Of a stretch of DNA of 64,000 nt, positions 26,419-33,365 are shown in pieces (positions within the stretch are counted from its first letter, which is position 1; each line of letters opens with the position of its first letter). A program made the translations under genes and the position numbers. A model generated the notes under the pieces. That model had not been told where the DNA came from. It did not search any database and was given only the letters and a program-made list of their open reading frames with translations. The stretch is from IMG/VR virus record IMGVR_UViG_3300032116_014939, positions 178,065 through 242,064 of that record; one strand, written 5' to 3'.

Positions 26419-28482
26419 ATGACAGATTCAGTTGATGAAGGTGGAAAACTACCAAAAAAGACAGAGGTAAACTCAAGTACACCTGTTCTAGACAATTTTA
26501 GTCGTGACCTTATTAAACTTGCCGAGGAAGGTAAATTAGACCCAGTTGTAGGTAGGGAAAACGAAATATTACGAATTGCACAAATTCTTTCAAGAAGAAA
26601 GAAAAATAACCCAATTATTATTGGTGAACCTGGTTGTGGTAAGACCGCAATTGTTGAGGGGTTGGCTATGAAGATTTTTGAAGGTGATTGTCCAAGAAAC
26701 CTAATTGATAAACGTATTTTATCATTAGAGATGAATTCGGTAATTGCCGGAACAAAGTATCGTGGTCAATTTGAAGAACGATTAAAGGTTATCTTGGAAG
26801 AAATTCAGGCAAACCCTAATGTTATTCTATTCATTGATGAAATCCATACTATTGTAGGAGCGGGTAACGCATCAGGTTCAATGGATGCATCTAACATTCT
26901 AAAACCTGCATTATCAAGAGGTGAAATACAATGTATTGGAGCAACAACATTGGATGAGTACAAGAAACAAATTGAAAAGGACGGAGCGTTAGATAGACGT
27001 TTCCAAAAAGTAATAGTTAGTTCTTCAACCAAAGAAGAAACATTACAAATCCTTAAGAATGTTAAAGACAGATATGAAAATTATCACAAGGTAAATTACA
27101 CTGATGAAATTTTACAAATCTGTGTTGATTTGGCGGAACGATATATCACAGACAGAGAGTTCCCTGATAAAGCGTTTGACATCTTGGATGAGGTTGGAGC
27201 AAGAGCTCAGGTAGATGTGAAAAATCCTGAAATTATTGATGAATTAAAACGTCAGGCATTAGAAATTAAACAACAAAAATTACTTGTTGTTAAAAAACAG
27301 AATTACGAAGAAGCCGCAAACTTAAGAGATAAAGAAAAGAAAGTTTTATCACAACTCGATATTGAAAAGAAAAAGTTTGAACAAACTCTTTTAGATAATA
27401 GAAAAACAATTTCTGAAGAATTGGTTTATGAGGTAGTGTCAACAATGACAAAAATACCTTTAACTAAACTTAATTTAGATGATAAAGTTGCTCTTATTAA
27501 TTTAGAAGAAGAGTTAAACAAATCAGTAGTTGGACAAAAAGATGCTGTTACTAAAATTGCAAAATCTATTCGTAGAAATAGATTAGGTATCAAAGACCCA
27601 AATAAACCAATTGGTTCATTTATATTCTTAGGTTCAACAGGTGTTGGTAAGACATTGTTGGCTAAAGAATTGGCTAAACAAATTTTTGGAAGTGAGGAAA
27701 ACCTTATCCGAGTTGATATGTCTGAATTCCAAGAAAAACATACCGTATCTCGTTTGATTGGTTCACCTCCTGGTTATGTTGGATATGATGAAGGTGGACA
27801 ACTTACAGAACAAGTAAAAACCAAACCATATTCTGTAGTATTATTTGACGAGGTTGAGAAAGCCCACAAAGATATCTTCTCAGCATTACTTCAACTATTA
27901 GACGAAGGTTACATGACGGATAGTTTTGGAAGAAAAATCAATTTCAAAAACTGTTTAATCATCATGACTTCAAATCTTGGGGTGAAAAAGATGCAAGAGT
28001 TTGGTGCAGGTGTTGGATTTAGTAAGACAGGTAATGTTTACACCAATGAAGAACTTAAGAAAACGATGTTGAATAAAGAATTGAAGAATCACTTCGCACC
28101 TGAGTTCATCAATCGTTTGGATGAAGTAATTGTATTCAACACACTTCAAAATGACGATATCCAAAAGATTGTTTTGGTTGAAATTAACAAACTAAAAACT
28201 CGTCTATTAAACTTGGGTTACAACATTAATTTTGGTCAATCAGTAATTGACTTTGTTTCAAAAGTAGGATTTGATGATGTTTACGGAGCACGTCCTCTAA
28301 AGAGAGCAATCCAAGAAAAGATTGAAGACTACATTTCAGATGAAGTATTACGTGAAAAAATTGTATTAGGTAAGACTTATAATATCGAAATCAATGAAGA
28401 AGAGGTTTCAATAACAGAAGTTGAAGTCCAACCTGATGAAACACCAAAAGTGAAAAGACCAAGAAAGAAAAAGGGGGAATAA
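26419..28482 (+). CDS. clpC: ClpC-type AAA+ unfoldase lacking the N-terminal Clp-N domain
   Basis: Two AAA modules (GEPGCGKT, FIDEIH; GSTGVGKT, LFDEVEKAH), short UVR-type middle coiled coil, ClpP-docking 'VGF' loop; sequence starts just before 'LDNFSRDL'. Confidence 0.92.
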   Translation: MTDSVDEGGKLPKKTEVNSSTPVLDNFSRDLIKLAEEGKLDPVVGRENEILRIAQILSRRKKNNPIIIGEPGCGKTAIVEGLAMKIFEGDCPRNLIDKRILSLEMNSVIAGTKYRGQFEERLKVILEEIQANPNVILFIDEIHTIVGAGNASGSMDASNILKPALSRGEIQCIGATTLDEYKKQIEKDGALDRRFQKVIVSSSTKEETLQILKNVKDRYENYHKVNYTDEILQICVDLAERYITDREFPDKAFDILDEVGARAQVDVKNPEIIDELKRQALEIKQQKLLVVKKQNYEEAANLRDKEKKVLSQLDIEKKKFEQTLLDNRKTISEELVYEVVSTMTKIPLTKLNLDDKVALINLEEELNKSVVGQKDAVTKIAKSIRRNRLGIKDPNKPIGSFIFLGSTGVGKTLLAKELAKQIFGSEENLIRVDMSEFQEKHTVSRLIGSPPGYVGYDEGGQLTEQVKTKPYSVVLFDEVEKAHKDIFSALLQLLDEGYMTDSFGRKINFKNCLIIMTSNLGVKKMQEFGAGVGFSKTGNVYTNEELKKTMLNKELKNHFAPEFINRLDEVIVFNTLQNDDIQKIVLVEINKLKTRLLNLGYNINFGQSVIDFVSKVGFDDVYGARPLKRAIQEKIEDYISDEVLREKIVLGKTYNIEINEEEVSITEVEVQPDETPKVKRPRKKKGE

Positions 28483-28499: not shown

Positions 28500-29318
28500 T
28501 TAAAAATTAAACATTTGTGAATTATGTATGAATTGGTATTTCTGTTTACCAAGTTCTTCGATTAGTTTTTTACCTGTATTCATACCAGCAAAAACTTCAT
28601 GGACAACAACATACTCATTTGGTGTGTGATAGTTATGATATCCGATTGAGAAGTTGATACAAGAGAAGTCAAACTTCTTACGAAGTTGCCAAACATCAGT
28701 GTAAGGGTGTTGCATATATTTTGGTTCAGACAACATACCTTCAGAAAGAACTTTTTTAGCTTTTGTTTCAAATTCAGAATCCGTTTCAAATACTTTAACA
28801 CCATAACAATATTCTGTTACCATGTAGTCGTCAGGAGCGTCAAATTGAATTGCGTAACCTACATTACTAAAGAAATCTCTGTCAGCTTCTTTTGAACCCA
28901 AACAACCAACTTCTTCAGATACAAATAAAGCAACTTTAATTACATCAAAGACTTCCAATAACTGAAGACAAGCAAACACTCCACACTTATCATCACCACC
29001 AATACCTGTTGGGTTACCCAAATCGTTATATGCCTTAAGAGATAAACTTAGATTACCTTTTGAATCTTTAAGTTGTTCTTCATGGATATTGATTGTGTCA
29101 ATGTTATGAACCGTATCGGTATGTGCGACAATACAAGGATAAAATTCACCCTCGTTTATTTCACCCTTTGTGACATAAACATTTCCAAAGTCATCAACTT
29201 TAAAATTGTGTTTTTTTTCGGTTAAATATTCAACCAAAAATTCAATCATTAAATCTTCTTTAAATGATTTTGTAGGTATTGACAATACCTTTTTTAAGAA
29301 ATCAACATTTTCTATCAT
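28500..29318 (-). CDS. zinc metallopeptidase, M20/M28/M42 clan
   Basis: 'AHTDTV', 'GIGGDDKCG', 'SEEVGCLGS', 'GYHNYHT'. Confidence 0.85.
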   Translation of the reverse strand: MIENVDFLKKVLSIPTKSFKEDLMIEFLVEYLTEKKHNFKVDDFGNVYVTKGEINEGEFYPCIVAHTDTVHNIDTINIHEEQLKDSKGNLSLSLKAYNDLGNPTGIGGDDKCGVFACLQLLEVFDVIKVALFVSEEVGCLGSKEADRDFFSNVGYAIQFDAPDDYMVTEYCYGVKVFETDSEFETKAKKVLSEGMLSEPKYMQHPYTDVWQLRKKFDFSCINFSIGYHNYHTPNEYVVVHEVFAGMNTGKKLIEELGKQKYQFIHNSQMFNF

Positions 29319-29345: not shown

Positions 29346-30425
29346 TTAAAACAATTCAGGATGATATAAAAAATTTAAAAAAGTATCATAATCAATTTTA
29401 ACGGTTTGGTTAAATTCATTTTTACTATGATTACTATATGTAACAAGTATCTTTCCGTCATCAACATCTTGAATTATGAATTTGTTTGGTGTCTTTTCAC
29501 CAAATGTTTTTTGTGAAGGAAATTCATACCATTTATTAAATTCACTATACTTTAACTTTGATAATTTTTCAAGTATTTCAGAGTTTTTACGATAAGAATC
29601 GATATTATCACTATTTTCAATTTTTTCCATGATTTTGTCAAGATTCCAAGTTACACTTCTGTTAAAACCTTCATCATCATAATTTTGACTATCAAAATAA
29701 GCATAATAATCTTCATATAAATCTTCATCAAACTGTATTCCCAATTGGTCAATACTTGTTTTTAACATATCTGAAAGTTTAGCGTCTTTGTCTTCACCAG
29801 ATTTATCCCAAGTATTTAAAAGAATTGCTACAGTTGTCATGTAGAGATTAGTACATTTTTTCTCAAAGATATTTAAAGGAAGTAAAGCGTTACATAATTT
29901 AGATGTAACATATTGTCTTAATCCTTTAACCAAGGCTTCATCATATTCACTTGAATAATCGTAAATAATACTATCTATCTCATTTGAAAATTCATTTTTT
30001 AACCACTTACAAATTTCAATAACTTTATCGTTATGATTTCTTAAATCATCAACGGAAAGACTAGGTCTTAATATTTTTACTATTTGTTTAACCCTATCTA
30101 AATTCTCATCATTGAAATAGTGTAGTAAATAACCCTCGTCCCAATCATAATCCATGGAATAATCATCAACAAAAACATTACCTCCATAATACCCCCCTTG
30201 GAAAGCAACTCTAATTAAATAACCGTTATTAGTTTCATCATTATTTCTAGTGAAAAGGTCAACATAATCATTAGTATCAAACGTTAAATAAACCAAAGAC
30301 TTACCAAGATTTTTTTCATTTATTCTTGTAATACGTAAAATATCCTCATCGTCTTCGTACCTAACAAAATTTGCGGTAACTAAATCTTCCGTAAAATCTT
30401 TTAATGCCTGATAAAGTTGACTCAT
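29346..30425 (-). CDS. hypothetical acidic protein
   Basis: 359-aa ORF; TATTTAT motif upstream. Confidence 0.75.
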   Translation of the reverse strand: MSQLYQALKDFTEDLVTANFVRYEDDEDILRITRINEKNLGKSLVYLTFDTNDYVDLFTRNNDETNNGYLIRVAFQGGYYGGNVFVDDYSMDYDWDEGYLLHYFNDENLDRVKQIVKILRPSLSVDDLRNHNDKVIEICKWLKNEFSNEIDSIIYDYSSEYDEALVKGLRQYVTSKLCNALLPLNIFEKKCTNLYMTTVAILLNTWDKSGEDKDAKLSDMLKTSIDQLGIQFDEDLYEDYYAYFDSQNYDDEGFNRSVTWNLDKIMEKIENSDNIDSYRKNSEILEKLSKLKYSEFNKWYEFPSQKTFGEKTPNKFIIQDVDDGKILVTYSNHSKNEFNQTVKIDYDTFLNFLYHPELF

Positions 30426-30446: not shown

Positions 30447-30478
30447 CTTGGTAAAAGAAGAATATATTTATATCTTTG
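30447..30478 (+). promoter_or_regulatory. Bacteroidota-type promoter for tmRNA
   Basis: CTTG, 20 bp, TATCTTTG (30471-30478). Confidence 0.7.
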
Positions 30479-30500
30479 TAACATAGTTCTTTGAGTATAT

Positions 30501-30895
30501 GGGGATGTTTTTGGATTTGACAGGTATGAATCTGTCATAAAACGCACGTCGGGGCTAAACTAACCCTGTAAAACTGGTTTAAAACACAAACGGCAACACA
30601 ATTGCAAAACTTTCTACACTCGGTTTAATCCGTACTGAAGAAGTAACTGTAGCCTAATCTAAGATTAGTATACAACGGGGTCGGTGAGCATATAACCTTG
30701 CAACAGAAGCTTGTACTGTGGTGTGGTTTCTATCCGAAAAGAAACAAAGTGGAGGATTAGTTCTCAGTAAACCGAACCACTATAAAATAAGGGAATTGTG
30801 AAGTTTCGGATTGTTTAGAAAAACAATGACCTAAACGTGTAGTGTTTTATGGTCGACATATTTGGACCGGGGTTCGAACCCCCGCATCTCCACCA
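30501..30895 (+). ncRNA. ssrA: tmRNA
   Basis: 5' GGGGATGTTTTTGGATTTGACAGG and 3' GGTTCGAACCCCCGCATCTCCACCA; acceptor stem GGGGAUG/CAUCUCC with the G3:U alanine determinant, T-loop and encoded CCA; 395 nt. Confidence 0.95.
30592..30657 (+). other. tmRNA tag reading frame (A)GNTIAKLSTLGLIRTEEVTVA*
   Basis: Resume-like context ACAAAC|GGC AAC, then 21 sense codons and TAA. Confidence 0.7.
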
Positions 30896-30898
30896 ATT

Positions 30899-30926
30899 AA
30901 AAAGGGACTTTTCAGTCCCTTTTTTT
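30899..30926. terminator. bidirectional intrinsic terminator after tmRNA
   Basis: AAAAAGGGACT-tttc-AGTCCCTTTTTT. Confidence 0.85.
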
Positions 30927-31794
30927 ATTTTATCATTTTTGATTTAATTCTTTTAACATCTTCTAAAATATTCTTTTTCTTTTGTTCAGATTCAAATTGT
31001 GGTATAATACTTTTAACTTTATCTAAAATATCATCTAATTTATATCCGAATATTTCAAACCCATTATCATCGTCTTTCACATCATCATCAGAAAAAAGTT
31101 CTTTTGCTTTATCCACCAATCCTTTTTGACTTTCTTTATCACCTACCTTTGCATCTGATAAGTCACCTAATCCAACATAATCTAAAAATTTATCAAGTTT
31201 ACTTGGTTCTTGTAATGGTATTTTTGACTCAATTTTATCAAAATCAATATGGTCTAAATCTAAATCTTTAACTGATGAACAAAATTCAGAAGTGCCGTGA
31301 CCTTCATCTTTTCCACTTTCAGACCAAGAAAAATGATAGTGAACACCTGTTGAATGTTTACTTGGATGTCTATATTCATCAATAAAAGTAAACCCAGGAT
31401 ATTTTTTTCTTACAGCACATAACACAGTTGATATTCTATCTAATTCTTCATCATCATTTTTATCAACCCCTTTAAATACAACGTCATTAGCATTACCTTT
31501 ATTATGTCGACTATTTGGGTAACTTTGGTGGAATTTATCTCTACCTGAACCAAATCTAATTTTTAGATGAGGTAACTCTTGTTTTAAGGCGGCGGCGGCT
31601 TTTTTCAAAACATCACCAAATTGAGGGGTTAAGTCTCCGACCTCAGCCATGGTTGATTTTGTTTCATAACCTAATCCCTCCAAATAATTTTTAACACTTG
31701 ATGCCACAGGACGAGCAATTGATTCTTCTTCAAAGATATATTCTAACTTACGTAGTTCTTTTAATGATTGCTCGTGTAATTGTTTTTTATTCAT
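30925..31794 (-). CDS. peptidase M15 (LAS)-like peptidoglycan endopeptidase domain protein
   Basis: 'SRHNKGNAND' (H-x6-D) and 'GVHYHFSW' (HxH) zinc motif. Confidence 0.7.
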   Translation of the reverse strand: MNKKQLHEQSLKELRKLEYIFEEESIARPVASSVKNYLEGLGYETKSTMAEVGDLTPQFGDVLKKAAAALKQELPHLKIRFGSGRDKFHQSYPNSRHNKGNANDVVFKGVDKNDDEELDRISTVLCAVRKKYPGFTFIDEYRHPSKHSTGVHYHFSWSESGKDEGHGTSEFCSSVKDLDLDHIDFDKIESKIPLQEPSKLDKFLDYVGLGDLSDAKVGDKESQKGLVDKAKELFSDDDVKDDDNGFEIFGYKLDDILDKVKSIIPQFESEQKKKNILEDVKRIKSKMIK

Positions 31795-31806
31795 TATGAA
31801 AATGGT

Positions 31807-31820
31807 ATATTTATAAATAT
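31807..31820. promoter_or_regulatory. palindromic double TATTTAT motif between divergent genes
   Basis: ATATTTATAAATAT is a perfect 14-bp palindrome between starts at 31794 (-) and 31822 (+). Confidence 0.65.
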
Positions 31821-31821
31821 T

Positions 31822-32589
31822 ATGGAAAACAATAAATTAATTCAAATCGCCAAAAAGTTATCTTTATCCATTAAAGATAGATATGTTACACAAATATCAA
31901 GAAAATTAAATGACCGTAAAGGCCCGTATCGACAAATGATGTCCGTGTTAGAAGGATGGGATTTTGTTAAATTGGTATTTTTAATCAACGCCATTAATAA
32001 TGGTGAAAAAGAATTTGAATCAATATTATGGAAATTAGACAATGAAAGATTTACCTACGCAATTGCCACTGTATTTGATACTGAAGTTCAGGAAAGCTGT
32101 GATTACTGTGGTGGTGATGGTGAGATTAGTTGCAGTGAATGCGATAGTTCAGGTGAAGTAGATTGTGATGAATGTGGTGGTGAAGGTGAAGACGACGAAG
32201 GTGAAACATGTTCAAATTGTGATGGTCGTGGTAGACTTGATTGTGATACCTGTGGGGGTAGCGGTCATGAAGATTGTTATGACTGTGGTGGTACAGGTGA
32301 ACAACAAAAAAGCGATGCTTACGAATTAAAATTAGACTTTTATTTTAGTATTAATGAAGAATTAAAATCAGAAGTTAGTGAACTTAACAGATATGACAAA
32401 ATTGACTCTGACACAATCACAGATTATGAAGATACAAATGAAACTATATTAGTATACGCATCACCGATGGCAATAGAAGTTGAGACAAATGAAGATTTAG
32501 AATATAATACTGAATATTTCTATGAAATAGATACAGCAGGATGGGTTGGTAATACGGCTAGTAACCCAAACTTTGATTTAGATTATTAA
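31822..32589 (+). CDS. DnaJ-type zinc-finger (CxxCxGxG) repeat protein without a J domain
   Basis: Six repeats: CDYCGGDG, CSECDSSG, CDECGGEG, CSNCDGRG, CDTCGGSG, CYDCGGTG; no HPD motif; ATG at 31822. Confidence 0.75.
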   Translation: MENNKLIQIAKKLSLSIKDRYVTQISRKLNDRKGPYRQMMSVLEGWDFVKLVFLINAINNGEKEFESILWKLDNERFTYAIATVFDTEVQESCDYCGGDGEISCSECDSSGEVDCDECGGEGEDDEGETCSNCDGRGRLDCDTCGGSGHEDCYDCGGTGEQQKSDAYELKLDFYFSINEELKSEVSELNRYDKIDSDTITDYEDTNETILVYASPMAIEVETNEDLEYNTEYFYEIDTAGWVGNTASNPNFDLDY

Positions 32590-33203
32590 ATCAAAAAGTT
32601 TCTAACTGACTGAGTGTCTTTTTTGAAGTCCTCTCTAAAATTCTTTGTAAACTCCTCATTTTCACAATATACTTCAACATGTTCACTGAACACCCAATCC
32701 ATACAAAGAAGAGCTATTAAATGATTTTCTTTGTCCATAATTGGTAATGAAACCATAGATTGTGTTCCAAACTTTTTAATTAAAGCTCTCGTTGCAATAT
32801 CAGGGATAAGTTCACAATCGTGAATAAACAATCCGTCATCCATAGTTTGTTTAATTAACCAATTGTAATGACTTACAAAAACATTTTGTATTTTTTCAGT
32901 TATTCTTTCAAGACCATCTGAACATCTTTCATATGTCACAGACGCTTTTTGCATTGCTGATGATGTATAGAAATTACCACCATTGTGAAATTGAATAACA
33001 TATATTCTATCAGCATTATATTTTCTTCTAATTTCTCTTAAAGTAGAGTGAACAATTTCATCTGTTTCAATTTGCTGAGAAAGTTTGTTTCTTGAACTTT
33101 GCTTTGCTCTCTTTTCCTTCATCATATTGAAAAACCCCGCAGTTATTAATGCTATAACAATTGATGTAACTGAGGTAATAATCGTTGGTACTAGTTCCTT
33201 CAC
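32586..33203 (-). CDS. membrane-anchored GAF-fold protein, T4 holin T-like candidate
   Basis: One N-terminal TM segment, then 'NADRIYVIQFHNGG...SMVSLPIMDKENHLIALLCMDW', typical of GAF strands. Confidence 0.55.
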   Translation of the reverse strand: MKELVPTIITSVTSIVIALITAGFFNMMKEKRAKQSSRNKLSQQIETDEIVHSTLREIRRKYNADRIYVIQFHNGGNFYTSSAMQKASVTYERCSDGLERITEKIQNVFVSHYNWLIKQTMDDGLFIHDCELIPDIATRALIKKFGTQSMVSLPIMDKENHLIALLCMDWVFSEHVEVYCENEEFTKNFREDFKKDTQSVRNFLI

Positions 33204-33288: not shown

Positions 33289-33365
33289 TGGTACCCCCGA
33301 AGGGATTCGAACCCCTGACCCACAGATTAGAAATCTGTTGCTCTATCCTACTGAGCTACGAAGGC
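33289..33365 (-). tRNA. tRNA-Arg(UCU)
   Basis: GCCTTCG-TA-GCTCAGTAGGATAGAGC-A-ACAGA-TTTCTAA-TCTGT-GGGTC-AGGGGTTCGAATCCCTT-CGGGGGT-ACCA; TATATTTG promoter at 33378-33385 (minus strand). Confidence 0.95.

What the first reader, a model, noticed from the sequence alone, without database searches (positions are those of the whole stretch)
30501..30895. Phage tmRNA with a long, non-canonical tag, about 2 kb from the phage ClpC
Seen: the predicted tag (A)GNTIAKLSTLGLIRTEEVTVA has 21 encoded residues and ends VTVA. Established: typical bacterial tags are about 10 residues and end in (Y/F)ALAA, read by ClpXP and related proteases. Inference: the phage may reroute rescued-ribosome products away from host proteases or toward its own ClpC and M20/M28 peptidase, forming a private rescue-and-degradation circuit. 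The resume codon is inferred, not proven.
Basis: partly seen in the sequence, partly recalled or inferred. Interest (0 to 1): 0.65.

Follow-up and report, generated by a model that had tools for sequence, protein, structure and literature searches.

The report
Phage tmRNA with long private tag
A freshwater jumbo phage, probably of Bacteroidota, carries its own working ribosome-rescue RNA (tmRNA) that adds a conserved 21-residue tag unlike its host's, always beside a truncated ClpC unfoldase and a peptidase; whether those proteins read the tag is untested.

Summary
Window 30501-30895 (+) is a complete one-piece tmRNA (Rfam 133.5 bits, E 5e-52). Across 73 unique homologues this frame is always open. 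Differences are 43% synonymous, against 8% just upstream. In relatives, ARAGORN's start codon encodes Asn, Ser or Asp. The RNA is under structural selection: 37 of 49 consensus pairs covary and the G3:U70 pair never changes. It has a conserved Bacteroidota-type promoter and its own terminator.

The tag family has 34 variants of 21-22 residues, all ending in Ala and usually V-A. Sampled Bacteroidota tags have 9-10 residues and end in (L/V/M)AA.

The order ClpC-like, PepT-like peptidase, ORF359, tmRNA was found in 31 of 31 loci retrieved by the tag alone. The ClpC-like protein lacks the N-domain but keeps a ClpP-docking VGF loop. No ClpP or SmpB was found in this record.

A "private" degradation circuit is plausible but unshown. 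The synteny comes from one lineage, and the four other phages checked do not link tmRNA with ClpC. Phage tmRNAs with long odd tags are already known (Bxz1). I call this a new variant of a known kind.

The parts
30448..30478 (+). Bacteroidota-type sigma-A promoter of the tmRNA gene: TTG at 30448-30450, a 20-nt spacer, then the -7 box TATCTTTG at 30471-30478. The inferred transcription start is near 30483, which leaves a leader of about 18 nt.
   Evidence: Read from the sequence. TAnnTTTG lies 28-36 nt upstream of the tmRNA 5' end in 64 of 81 unique upstream regions of relatives. The consensus TTTG/TANNTTTG, with the box at -12 to -5, comes from PMC6847099 and PMC9723704. The transcription start is inferred, not measured.
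30501..30895 (+). One-piece tmRNA gene (ssrA) of 395 nt with an encoded 3' CCA
   Evidence: ARAGORN. Rfam RF00023 at 133.5 bits, E 5.1e-52, full model length. 37 of 49 consensus base pairs show compensatory changes across 73 unique homologues, and G3:U70 (30503:30889) never changes.
30592..30657 (+). Tag reading frame: resume codon GGC 30592-30594, 21 sense codons, stop TAA 30655-30657. With the Ala carried by the tmRNA, 22 residues are added.
   Evidence: alignment to the Rfam consensus, relatives that lack the GCA codon, a synonymous-substitution pattern, and the only frame open in all 73 unique homologues.
30654..30668 (+). Short hairpin (CTAATC / GATTAG) that holds the tag stop codon, where helix 5 sits in known tmRNAs
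   Evidence: Read directly from the sequence. Not tested by covariation.
30899..30924 (+). Intrinsic terminator 4 nt after the CCA end
   Evidence: 11-pair stem, 4-nt loop, T-run.
26419..28482 (+). ClpC-like double-ring AAA+ unfoldase of 687 aa. It lacks the Clp_N domain and keeps the short M-domain and a VGF ClpP-docking loop.
   Evidence: Pfam AAA, AAA_lid_9, AAA_2 and ClpB_D2-small. PHROG 4871. It aligns in one stretch to S. aureus ClpC residues 156-803, E 2e-219. The motif GAGVGF is conserved in 7 diverse relatives. Bacteroidota homologues are about 847 aa, with about 165-185 extra N-terminal residues.
28500..29318 (-). M20-type (PepT-like) metallopeptidase core, 272 aa
   Evidence: PHROG 4191 'peptidase', E 4.6e-36. 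Pfam M42, M20 and M28 hits all fall below their cut-offs. The PDB alignment to peptidase T keeps the DDK, EE and H motifs. It is present in every family locus with enough flank.
29346..30425 (-). ORF359: a fast-evolving protein of unknown function between the peptidase and the tmRNA. It is part of the conserved cassette.
   Evidence: No Pfam, PHROG or NCBIfam hit. Homologues at 25-100% identity occur in all family loci with enough flank. The AlphaFold model has pLDDT 90.2, but there is no fold match: Foldseek found nothing at E <= 0.001 and the best VIA Z is 5.0.

Best explanation
This is a functional phage-encoded one-piece tmRNA. The host RNA polymerase transcribes it from a Bacteroidota-type promoter, and its own terminator ends the transcript. 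Host enzymes process it and charge it with alanine. Together with host SmpB (some relatives carry their own) it enters stalled ribosomes in the infected cell. Translation resumes at GGC 30592 and adds Ala plus 21 residues, closed by a non-polar V-x-V-A tail. The most likely purpose is to raise ribosome-rescue capacity during infection and to mark the truncated products for ATP-dependent proteolysis with a phage-specific signal. The three genes always found beside it are the best candidates for handling tagged products and recycling their amino acids: an N-domain-less ClpC with a ClpP-docking loop, a PepT-like peptidase, and ORF359. Shown here: the gene, its structure, the frame, selection on the peptide, the fixed cassette, and the difference from Bacteroidota tags. 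Inferred: the transcription start, the use of host SmpB, AlaRS and ClpP, and that the tag is a degron. Speculative (about 0.3): that the phage ClpC-like protein is the tag's reader.
For: tmRNA identity. Structural selection, with G3:U70 unchanged in 73 unique homologues. Resume codon and frame: (synonymous share 43% against 8% upstream; pN/pS 0.445; frame open in 73 of 73). Own promoter and terminator. Fixed cassette: (a tmRNA in 70 ClpC-anchored loci, i.e. wherever flank allowed; ClpC-like, peptidase and ORF359 in 31 of 31 tag-anchored loci with enough flank). ClpC-like features. Peptidase motifs. SmpB in two complete relatives. Bacteroidota host: no Shine-Dalgarno use (4%, equal to shuffled), the promoter, and ClpC signature peptides shared with Bacteroidota. 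Host-phylum tags of 9-10 residues ending LAA, VAA or MAA. The idea that phage tmRNAs tag proteins to recycle amino acids is already in print (PMC9004378).
Against: There are no expression data: no RNA run holds the locus. No SmpB or ClpP was found in this record, which is 82% complete, nor in the nearest complete relative, so the system depends on host parts that were not examined. ClpC linkage is one inherited arrangement in one lineage. Of the four other phages checked, Bxz1 has a long odd tag but no Clp ATPase. Of three huge phages with a ClpC-like gene, two have no tmRNA above the cut-off, and one has a tmRNA 364 kb from its ClpC. Nothing here shows that the tag is degraded at all.
Confidence: 0.7

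Rival explanations
1. The tmRNA is functional, but only host proteases (ClpXP, Lon, FtsH or the host's own ClpC) read its tag. The neighbouring ClpC-like gene, peptidase and ORF359 serve other purposes, such as general proteostasis or turnover of host proteins. They sit beside the tmRNA only because the gene order was inherited.
For: Every one of the 34 tag variants ends in Ala, preceded by V, A, L or T, and some end VAA. That is the general non-polar C-terminal form of known degradation tags (PMC4131195). There is no phage ClpP. ClpC and tmRNA are unlinked or not co-present in Bxz1 and three huge phages.
Against: All 21 positions are constrained, not only the tail. This points to a second, sequence-specific reader that has stayed constant while the phages diverged to 63% ClpC identity. 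The cassette stays intact while the downstream ORF289 is lost and tmRNA modules recombine.
Confidence: 0.4
2. The main role is ribosome rescue or counter-defence, and the fate of the tagged protein is secondary. The phage tmRNA would keep ribosomes free when host or defence nucleases cut mRNAs and tRNAs. The conserved tag would then have a function other than a degron, for example keeping the product harmless or soluble.
For: A host-type promoter suggests expression before phage-specific transcription. Some relatives add their own SmpB. Published views of phage tmRNAs include upkeep of the hijacked translation machinery (PMC9004378; PMC7162821).
Against: Rescue alone needs no particular tag, yet the peptide is under purifying selection over its whole length and always keeps a degron-like tail.
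Confidence: 0.25
3. The sequence is a captured host ssrA fragment or attachment-site remnant with no function of its own.
For: ssrA 3' ends are common integration sites, and temperate phages can carry fragments of them (PMC9004378).
Against: The gene is full length with its own promoter and terminator. It covaries across 73 unique copies. The record has no integrase. Among 401 Bacteroidota genomes, only the universal 3' tRNA-like end (query positions 331-395) gives a strong BLAST match, so there is no recent host donor among them.
Confidence: 0.02
4. ARAGORN's reading is right for this phage: translation resumes at GCA 30604 and the tag has 17 residues.
For: GCA is the commonest resume codon. 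It is preceded by CAAUU, which resembles the Rfam consensus UAAUU before GCA.
Against: The GCA exists only in the window's clade and in the clade of L032 and L034. Elsewhere that codon reads Asn, Ser or Asp, while the four residues before it stay conserved and show synonymous changes. GCA lies 22 nt after the first pseudoknot, against 10 nt for GGC.
Confidence: 0.08

Closest known systems
Bacterial one-piece tmRNA (SsrA, Rfam RF00023), for example in E. coli or Bacteroidota
   Same: Full architecture: acceptor stem with G3:U70, T-arm, encoded CCA, long P2 helix, a pseudoknot before the tag frame, a resume codon near nt 92 starting with G, Asn as second residue, a stop codon in a hairpin, and a non-polar tag end closed by Ala.
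   Different: It is encoded by a virus. The tag has 21-22 codons, against 9-10 in sampled Bacteroidota. The tag usually ends V-A rather than ALAA, and has a conserved hydrophobic and charged core (KLxxxGLIR-T/E-E). There is no adjacent or co-encoded SmpB in this record. Among 401 Bacteroidota genomes, only the 3' tRNA-like end gives a strong BLAST match.
Mycobacteriophage Bxz1-group tmRNAs (cluster C mycobacteriophages; listed in PMC4131195)
   Same: A phage-encoded one-piece tmRNA with a long, non-canonical tag. ARAGORN gives 25 residues ending AALV for Bxz1.
   Different: The sequence and tag are unrelated and the host is an actinobacterium. In Bxz1 the tmRNA sits in a tRNA cluster and the genome has no Clp-type AAA_2 ATPase. 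Here it sits in a fixed cassette with a ClpC-like gene and a peptidase.
tmRNAs of huge phages (Al-Shayeb et al. 2020, PMC7162821) and the two-piece tmRNA of OM43 phage Melnitz (PMC9004378)
   Same: Large aquatic or environmental phages carry tmRNA, sometimes with SmpB. Amino-acid recycling and upkeep of the translation machinery have been proposed as reasons. Two complete relatives of this phage also encode SmpB.
   Different: Those papers do not analyse the tag or any linkage to a protease. Melnitz's tmRNA is permuted and controlled by a riboswitch. BLAST of this tmRNA against 50,697 GenBank phage records found no match.
Mycoplasma tmRNA tags: long tags that switched protease specificity to Lon (Gur and Sauer 2008; recalled, not checked here)
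   Same: It is a precedent for a long tag whose internal residues redirect tagged proteins to a protease other than ClpXP.
   Different: It is bacterial, and it arose in lineages that lost ClpXP. Here the presumed host keeps its own canonical tag system, and the phage adds a second, different one.
ClpC of Firmicutes (S. aureus 6em9, B. subtilis 3j3t) and of Bacteroidota
   Same: The neighbouring gene aligns in one stretch over D1, the short M-domain, D2 and the D2-small domain, and has a [V]-G-F loop where the ClpP-docking loop lies. Identity to Bacteroidota ClpC is 54-58%.
   Different: It lacks the whole Clp_N domain, where MecA, McsB and ClpS-type adaptors and phospho-arginine bind. No ClpP is encoded with it.

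Membership tests
tmRNA (RF00023, one-piece) | tRNA-like domain: acceptor stem closed by the two ends, a T-arm and a 3' CCA | tested here: met
   The Rfam alignment covers model positions 1-374. Acceptor and T-stem pairs covary in 73 unique homologues. CCA is encoded at 30893-30895.
tmRNA (RF00023, one-piece) | G3:U70 wobble pair, the alanine identity element | tested here: met
   The pair 30503:30889 is G:U in 73 of 73 unique sequences.
tmRNA (RF00023, one-piece) | A pseudoknot (PK1) shortly upstream of the tag frame, and a long P2 helix | tested here: met
   The Rfam structure line matches. P2 pairs (30525-30549 with 30835-30860) and a PK1 stem (30551-30554 with 30564-30567) show compensatory changes. 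The second PK1 stem was read by eye only.
tmRNA (RF00023, one-piece) | An internal open frame with no start codon, entered at a G-initial resume codon and ended by a stop | tested here: met
   GGC at gene position 92 (positions 90-96 in relatives). The frame is open in 73 of 73, and the substitution pattern is that of a coding frame.
tmRNA (RF00023, one-piece) | Tag ends in a hydrophobic or small residue | tested here: met
   The last residue is Ala in all 34 variants. The one before it is V in 30, A in 2, L in 1 and T in 1.
tmRNA (RF00023, one-piece) | Canonical short tag of about 10 residues ending (Y/F)ALAA. This is typical of the family, not defining. | tested here: not met
   The tag has 21-22 residues and usually ends SVA, VVA, AVA or TVA. 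Sampled Bacteroidota tags have 9-10 residues ending LAA, VAA or MAA.
tmRNA (RF00023, one-piece) | Works with SmpB; is charged by AlaRS; performs trans-translation | not testable with these tools
   No SmpB was found in this record or in the nearest complete relative. SmpB is present in two other complete relatives. No RNA runs hold the locus.
ClpC-type unfoldase (partner of ClpP) | Two AAA+ modules plus a short coiled-coil M-domain | tested here: met
   Pfam AAA, AAA_lid_9, AAA_2 and ClpB_D2-small. It gives a single-stretch alignment to ClpC, but two stretches to ClpB, which has the long M-domain.
ClpC-type unfoldase (partner of ClpP) | ClpP-docking loop [LIVMA]-G-[FL] in D2 | tested here: met
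   VGF at residues 532-534. G531, G533 and F534 do not vary in 7 diverse relatives. Docking itself was not tested.
ClpC-type unfoldase (partner of ClpP) | N-terminal Clp_N domain (adaptor and phospho-arginine binding) | tested here: not met
   The alignment starts at ClpC residue 156. There is no Clp_N hit. Bacteroidota homologues carry about 165-185 extra N-terminal residues.
M20 (PepT-like) metallopeptidase | Catalytic-domain metal ligands and the general-base Glu | tested here: inconclusive
   The DDK, EE and H motifs align with peptidase T, and PHROG 4191 matches at E 4.6e-36. All Pfam and NCBIfam scores are below their cut-offs, and the lid or dimerisation domain is missing.

The most novel reading that the evidence does not exclude
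The four-part cassette is a self-contained phage module for tagging, unfolding and digesting proteins. In this reading the phage tmRNA puts a private 22-residue degron on products of stalled ribosomes, which during infection are mostly host-encoded. An N-domain-less ClpC reads the tag's conserved core, directly or through ORF359 acting as a new kind of adaptor. That ClpC then feeds the substrate to host ClpP, and the PepT-like peptidase finishes the peptides to amino acids for phage protein synthesis. The module would run in parallel with the host's ALAA/ClpXP system and be insulated from it.
Probability: 0.25. Interest if true: 0.8.

Novelty: new variant of a known kind. Interest (0 to 1): 0.55.

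Why it matters
Why some phages carry tmRNAs is an open question. In one survey, 402 of 18,146 phage genomes did (PMC9004378). Published answers are guesses. This family gives a testable case. The tag is long, peptide-level conserved and clearly unlike the presumed host's. It is always encoded next to an unfoldase that can dock on ClpP but has lost its adaptor-binding domain. If that unfoldase reads the tag, it would be the first virus-encoded degron-and-reader pair built on trans-translation, and a ready-made orthogonal degradation tag for Bacteroidota. If it does not, the family still shows that a phage can keep a second, different tag in a cell that already has one, which constrains ideas about what tags are for. 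The family is widespread in lakes: the locus is held by runs from 14 studies.

Tried and rejected
- BLAST of the tmRNA against 50,697 GenBank phage records found no match.
- Search for a host donor: among 401 Bacteroidota genomes, only the universal 3' tRNA-like end gives a strong match. That scan used patterns that may favour Bacteroidota, so ClpC identity alone does not name the host.
- Expression: no RNA run holds the locus. Read laying was not used, because DNA contigs cannot show RNA ends.
- ORF359: no Pfam, PHROG or NCBIfam hit, no atlas hit and no fold match. Its homologues are all 'hypothetical'.
- Genome-wide enrichment of TAnnTTTG upstream of genes is weak (1.23 against 0.81 per kb; antisense 0.99). 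The promoter argument therefore rests on the conserved tmRNA promoter only.
- The tag core motif occurs nowhere else in the 242 kb. None of 226 long ORFs ends in a tag-like tail, but only about 0.6 would be expected, so this says nothing.
- No Lon and no integrase were found in the record.
- Complex prediction was not used: the tag is shorter than the 30-residue minimum, and neighbourhood alone is not reason enough.
- Rejected readings: ARAGORN's 17-residue tag, and an attachment-site fragment.

Full report
WHAT IS THERE. ARAGORN and Rfam agree on a tmRNA at window 30501-30895, + strand. Rfam RF00023 scores 133.5 bits against a gathering score of 47 (E 5.1e-52) over the whole model. The window is the last 64 kb of a 242,064-bp IMG/VR virus record that CheckV rates 82% complete. 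GC is 32%. Near-identical DNA is held by freshwater and lake metagenome runs from 14 studies. No run is on record as RNA.

THE TAG. ARAGORN calls a 17-codon tag from GCA 30604. Both end at TAA 30655-30657.
- A search of IMG/VR with the neighbouring ClpC-like protein returned 80 loci out of 462 relatives. An nhmmer profile found the tmRNA in 70 of them, in practice wherever the flank reached far enough.
- A second search used only a degenerate pattern of the tag.
- In most clades the codon that is GCA in the window reads Asn, Ser or Asp. There ARAGORN itself starts at GGC.
- The Rfam alignment places the consensus resume codon on GGC and the next consensus codon, AAC, on AAC.
- Across unique sequences, third codon positions vary in 15 of 16 codons and second positions in 5 of 16. 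Codon differences are 43% synonymous inside the tag and 8% in the same frame just upstream.
- Pooled pN/pS is 0.445, with synonymous sites near saturation.
- The frame is open in 73 of 73 unique tmRNAs. The other two frames are open in 7 and 1.
- Relatives carry U at -5 and A at -4 before GGC. As I recall, these positions matter for frame choice in E. coli. The window's clade has C and A there.
- GGC lies 10 nt after the first pseudoknot, and GCA lies 22 nt after it.
The tagged product therefore gains Ala plus 21 residues. The family has 34 peptide variants of 21 or 22 residues. Gly (rarely Asp), Asn, Lys, Gly11, Arg14 and the final Ala are fixed or nearly so. The residue before the last is V in 30 variants and A, L or T in the rest.

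THE RNA IS UNDER SELECTION AND IS ITS OWN TRANSCRIPTION UNIT. In an RNAalifold consensus of 73 unique homologues, 37 of 49 pairs show compensatory double changes. These lie in the acceptor stem, P2, a PK1 stem and the T-arm. G3:U70, the alanine identity pair, never changes. A terminator hairpin follows the CCA by 4 nt. Upstream lies TTG, 20 nt, then TATCTTTG (30448-30478). TAnnTTTG sits 28-36 nt before the gene in 64 of 81 unique upstream regions. This is the -33/-7 promoter of Bacteroidota sigma-A (PMC6847099 and PMC9723704). It suggests that the host polymerase transcribes the gene.

HOST.
- The promoter described above is Bacteroidota-type.
- Only 4% of 195 long ORFs have a Shine-Dalgarno-like motif, the same as shuffled sequence. 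Bacteroidota naturally lack such motifs.
- The ClpC-like protein shares signature peptides with Bacteroidota ClpC at 54-58% identity. That scan's patterns may favour the phylum.
I put a Bacteroidota host at about 0.75. tmRNAs of freshwater and other Bacteroidota genomes encode 9-10-residue tags ending ALAA, RLAA, AVAA or AMAA. Among 401 genomes of the phylum, only the universal 3' end of the phage tmRNA gives a strong BLAST match. The phage tag is thus not a copy of a sampled host tag.

NEIGHBOURS.
- 26419-28482 (+) encodes a 687-aa double AAA+ protein. It aligns in one piece to S. aureus ClpC residues 156-803 (E 2e-219). It has the short M-domain and a conserved GAGVGF stretch where the ClpP-docking loop lies. 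It lacks the Clp_N domain, which Bacteroidota homologues of about 847 aa carry.
- 28500-29318 (-) is a 272-aa M20-type core. It aligns with peptidase T at the DDK, EE and H motifs, but scores below Pfam cut-offs.
- 29346-30425 (-), ORF359, has no family. Its model is confident (pLDDT 90.2) and has no fold match.
- All 31 tag-anchored loci with at least 4.6 kb of upstream flank contain all three genes. ClpC identity falls to 63% and ORF359 identity to about 25%, while the downstream ORF289 is mostly absent.
- The record has no SmpB, ClpP, Lon or integrase.
- The nearest complete relative (293,850 bp) also lacks SmpB and ClpP. Two complete 321-322-kb relatives encode SmpB, and one incomplete relative encodes ClpP.

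HOW IT MOST LIKELY WORKS. The gene is expressed by the host, processed and alanylated. With SmpB it rescues ribosomes stalled on broken messages, which should be plentiful when a lytic phage degrades host RNA. It tags the released products. Selection on the whole peptide argues that the tag is translated and is read by something specific. The non-polar tail closed by Ala argues that the tag is a proteolysis signal, like other tags (PMC4131195). The fixed neighbours are an unfoldase that can dock on ClpP but cannot use N-domain adaptors, a peptidase, and an unknown protein. This makes a phage-directed degradation and recycling route attractive, but nothing here tests it.

Three points weigh against a necessary link. 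The synteny is a single inherited arrangement. Mycobacteriophage Bxz1 has a 25-residue odd tag and no Clp ATPase. Of three huge phages with a ClpC-like gene, two lack a tmRNA above the cut-off, and one has a tmRNA 364 kb from its ClpC.

My estimates:
- real, functional tmRNA: 0.95
- GGC as the resume codon: 0.9
- the tag is a degron: about 0.65
- the phage ClpC-like protein is its reader: about 0.3

COMPARISON AND NOVELTY. Phage tmRNAs are known: Bxz1-group phages and Bacillus phage G (PMC4131195), huge phages with SmpB (PMC7162821), and 402 of 18,146 phage genomes in one survey (PMC9004378). Long non-canonical phage tags are on record (Bxz1). As I recall, a tag-driven switch of protease is known from Mycoplasma. 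What is new here:
- a large freshwater jumbo-phage family with a distinct, peptide-conserved tag of 21-22 residues
- a host-type promoter in front of the gene
- an invariable cassette with an N-domain-less ClpC, a PepT-like peptidase and a protein of unknown fold
One relative is in GenBank only as hypothetical proteins of an uncultured Caudovirales phage. The papers I read do not analyse it. I rate it a new variant of a known kind, with interest 0.55.

LIMITS. No alternative genetic code was used. Claims marked 'as I recall' were not checked in the library.

Noticed in passing
L042:14394-14624 (also L024, L025, L023, L026, L037, L032, L043; L031 is interrupted at the same site but its 3' exon was not located): In a subset of relatives the tmRNA gene is split in its T-loop, after GGGTT. 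In eight of the nine loci checked the 3' exon resumes about 224-229 nt downstream. In L042 the insert is a 231-nt group I intron (RF00028, 71.4 bits, E 5e-18), which is why ARAGORN missed these genes. As I recall, a tmRNA T-loop intron has been reported only from Clostridium botulinum. The window's own gene has no intron.
   Followed up: partly
L009, L011, L012, L021 against window 30700-30830; L013, L032, L034, L051, L063, L064, L077 against window 30545-30585: The tmRNAs are mosaics. Phages whose ClpC is 94-97% identical to the window's carry a different 3' pseudoknot module (383 nt against 395 nt). Seven lineages carry an unrelated PK1 module. The tag stays the same, which points to recombination between tmRNA genes with the tag held constant.
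   Followed up: partly
L083 (G002:C1:187024-187425), L084 (G003:C1:6823-7203), L085 (G005:C1:167371-167898): Two complete 321-322-kb relatives encode their own SmpB (137.9 and 112.9 bits). In the one mapped, G002, it lies about 97 kb from the tmRNA. One incomplete relative encodes a ClpP (184 bits). The window's record and its nearest complete relative encode neither.
   Followed up: partly
window 29346-30425 (-): ORF359 gives a confident AlphaFold model (pLDDT 90.2, pTM 0.79) with no match in the PDB (best VIA Z 5.0). It evolves fast, down to about 25% identity, yet is never lost from the cassette. Some relatives add an N-terminal extension of about 100-140 residues.
   Followed up: partly
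whole record G000 (242 kb): Shine-Dalgarno-like motifs precede only 4% of 195 long ORFs, the same as shuffled sequence. With the conserved TTG/TAnnTTTG promoter before the tmRNA, this points to a Bacteroidota host.
   Followed up: partly
window 31780-32589 (+) and 32586-33203 (-): Downstream of the tmRNA lie two further genes. One encodes a protein with a run of DnaJ-type CxxCxGxG zinc-finger repeats (Pfam hit below the cut-off; the TTG start is doubtful). The other encodes a GAF-domain protein. Homologues occur in 33 and 44 of the related loci.
   Followed up: no
window 33289-33365 (-): A tRNA-Arg (anticodon TCT) lies 2.4 kb downstream of the tmRNA. Close relatives keep it there, while more distant ones have tRNA-Met, and sometimes Ile(TAT), Cys, Glu, Lys or Leu.
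   Followed up: no
L045, L054, L061, L072, L077, L082 (3' ends of their tmRNA genes): Several relatives do not encode the full 3' CCA after the acceptor stem (ends such as CACAC, CACCG, CACTC). They would need CCA addition after transcription, unlike the window's gene.
   Followed up: no
L322 (LR756508.1:92434-92880): A 484-kb huge phage with a ClpC-like gene also has a tmRNA (72 bits). ARAGORN calls its tag as only 8 residues ending in Trp, which looks like a wrong frame. It was not examined further.
   Followed up: no
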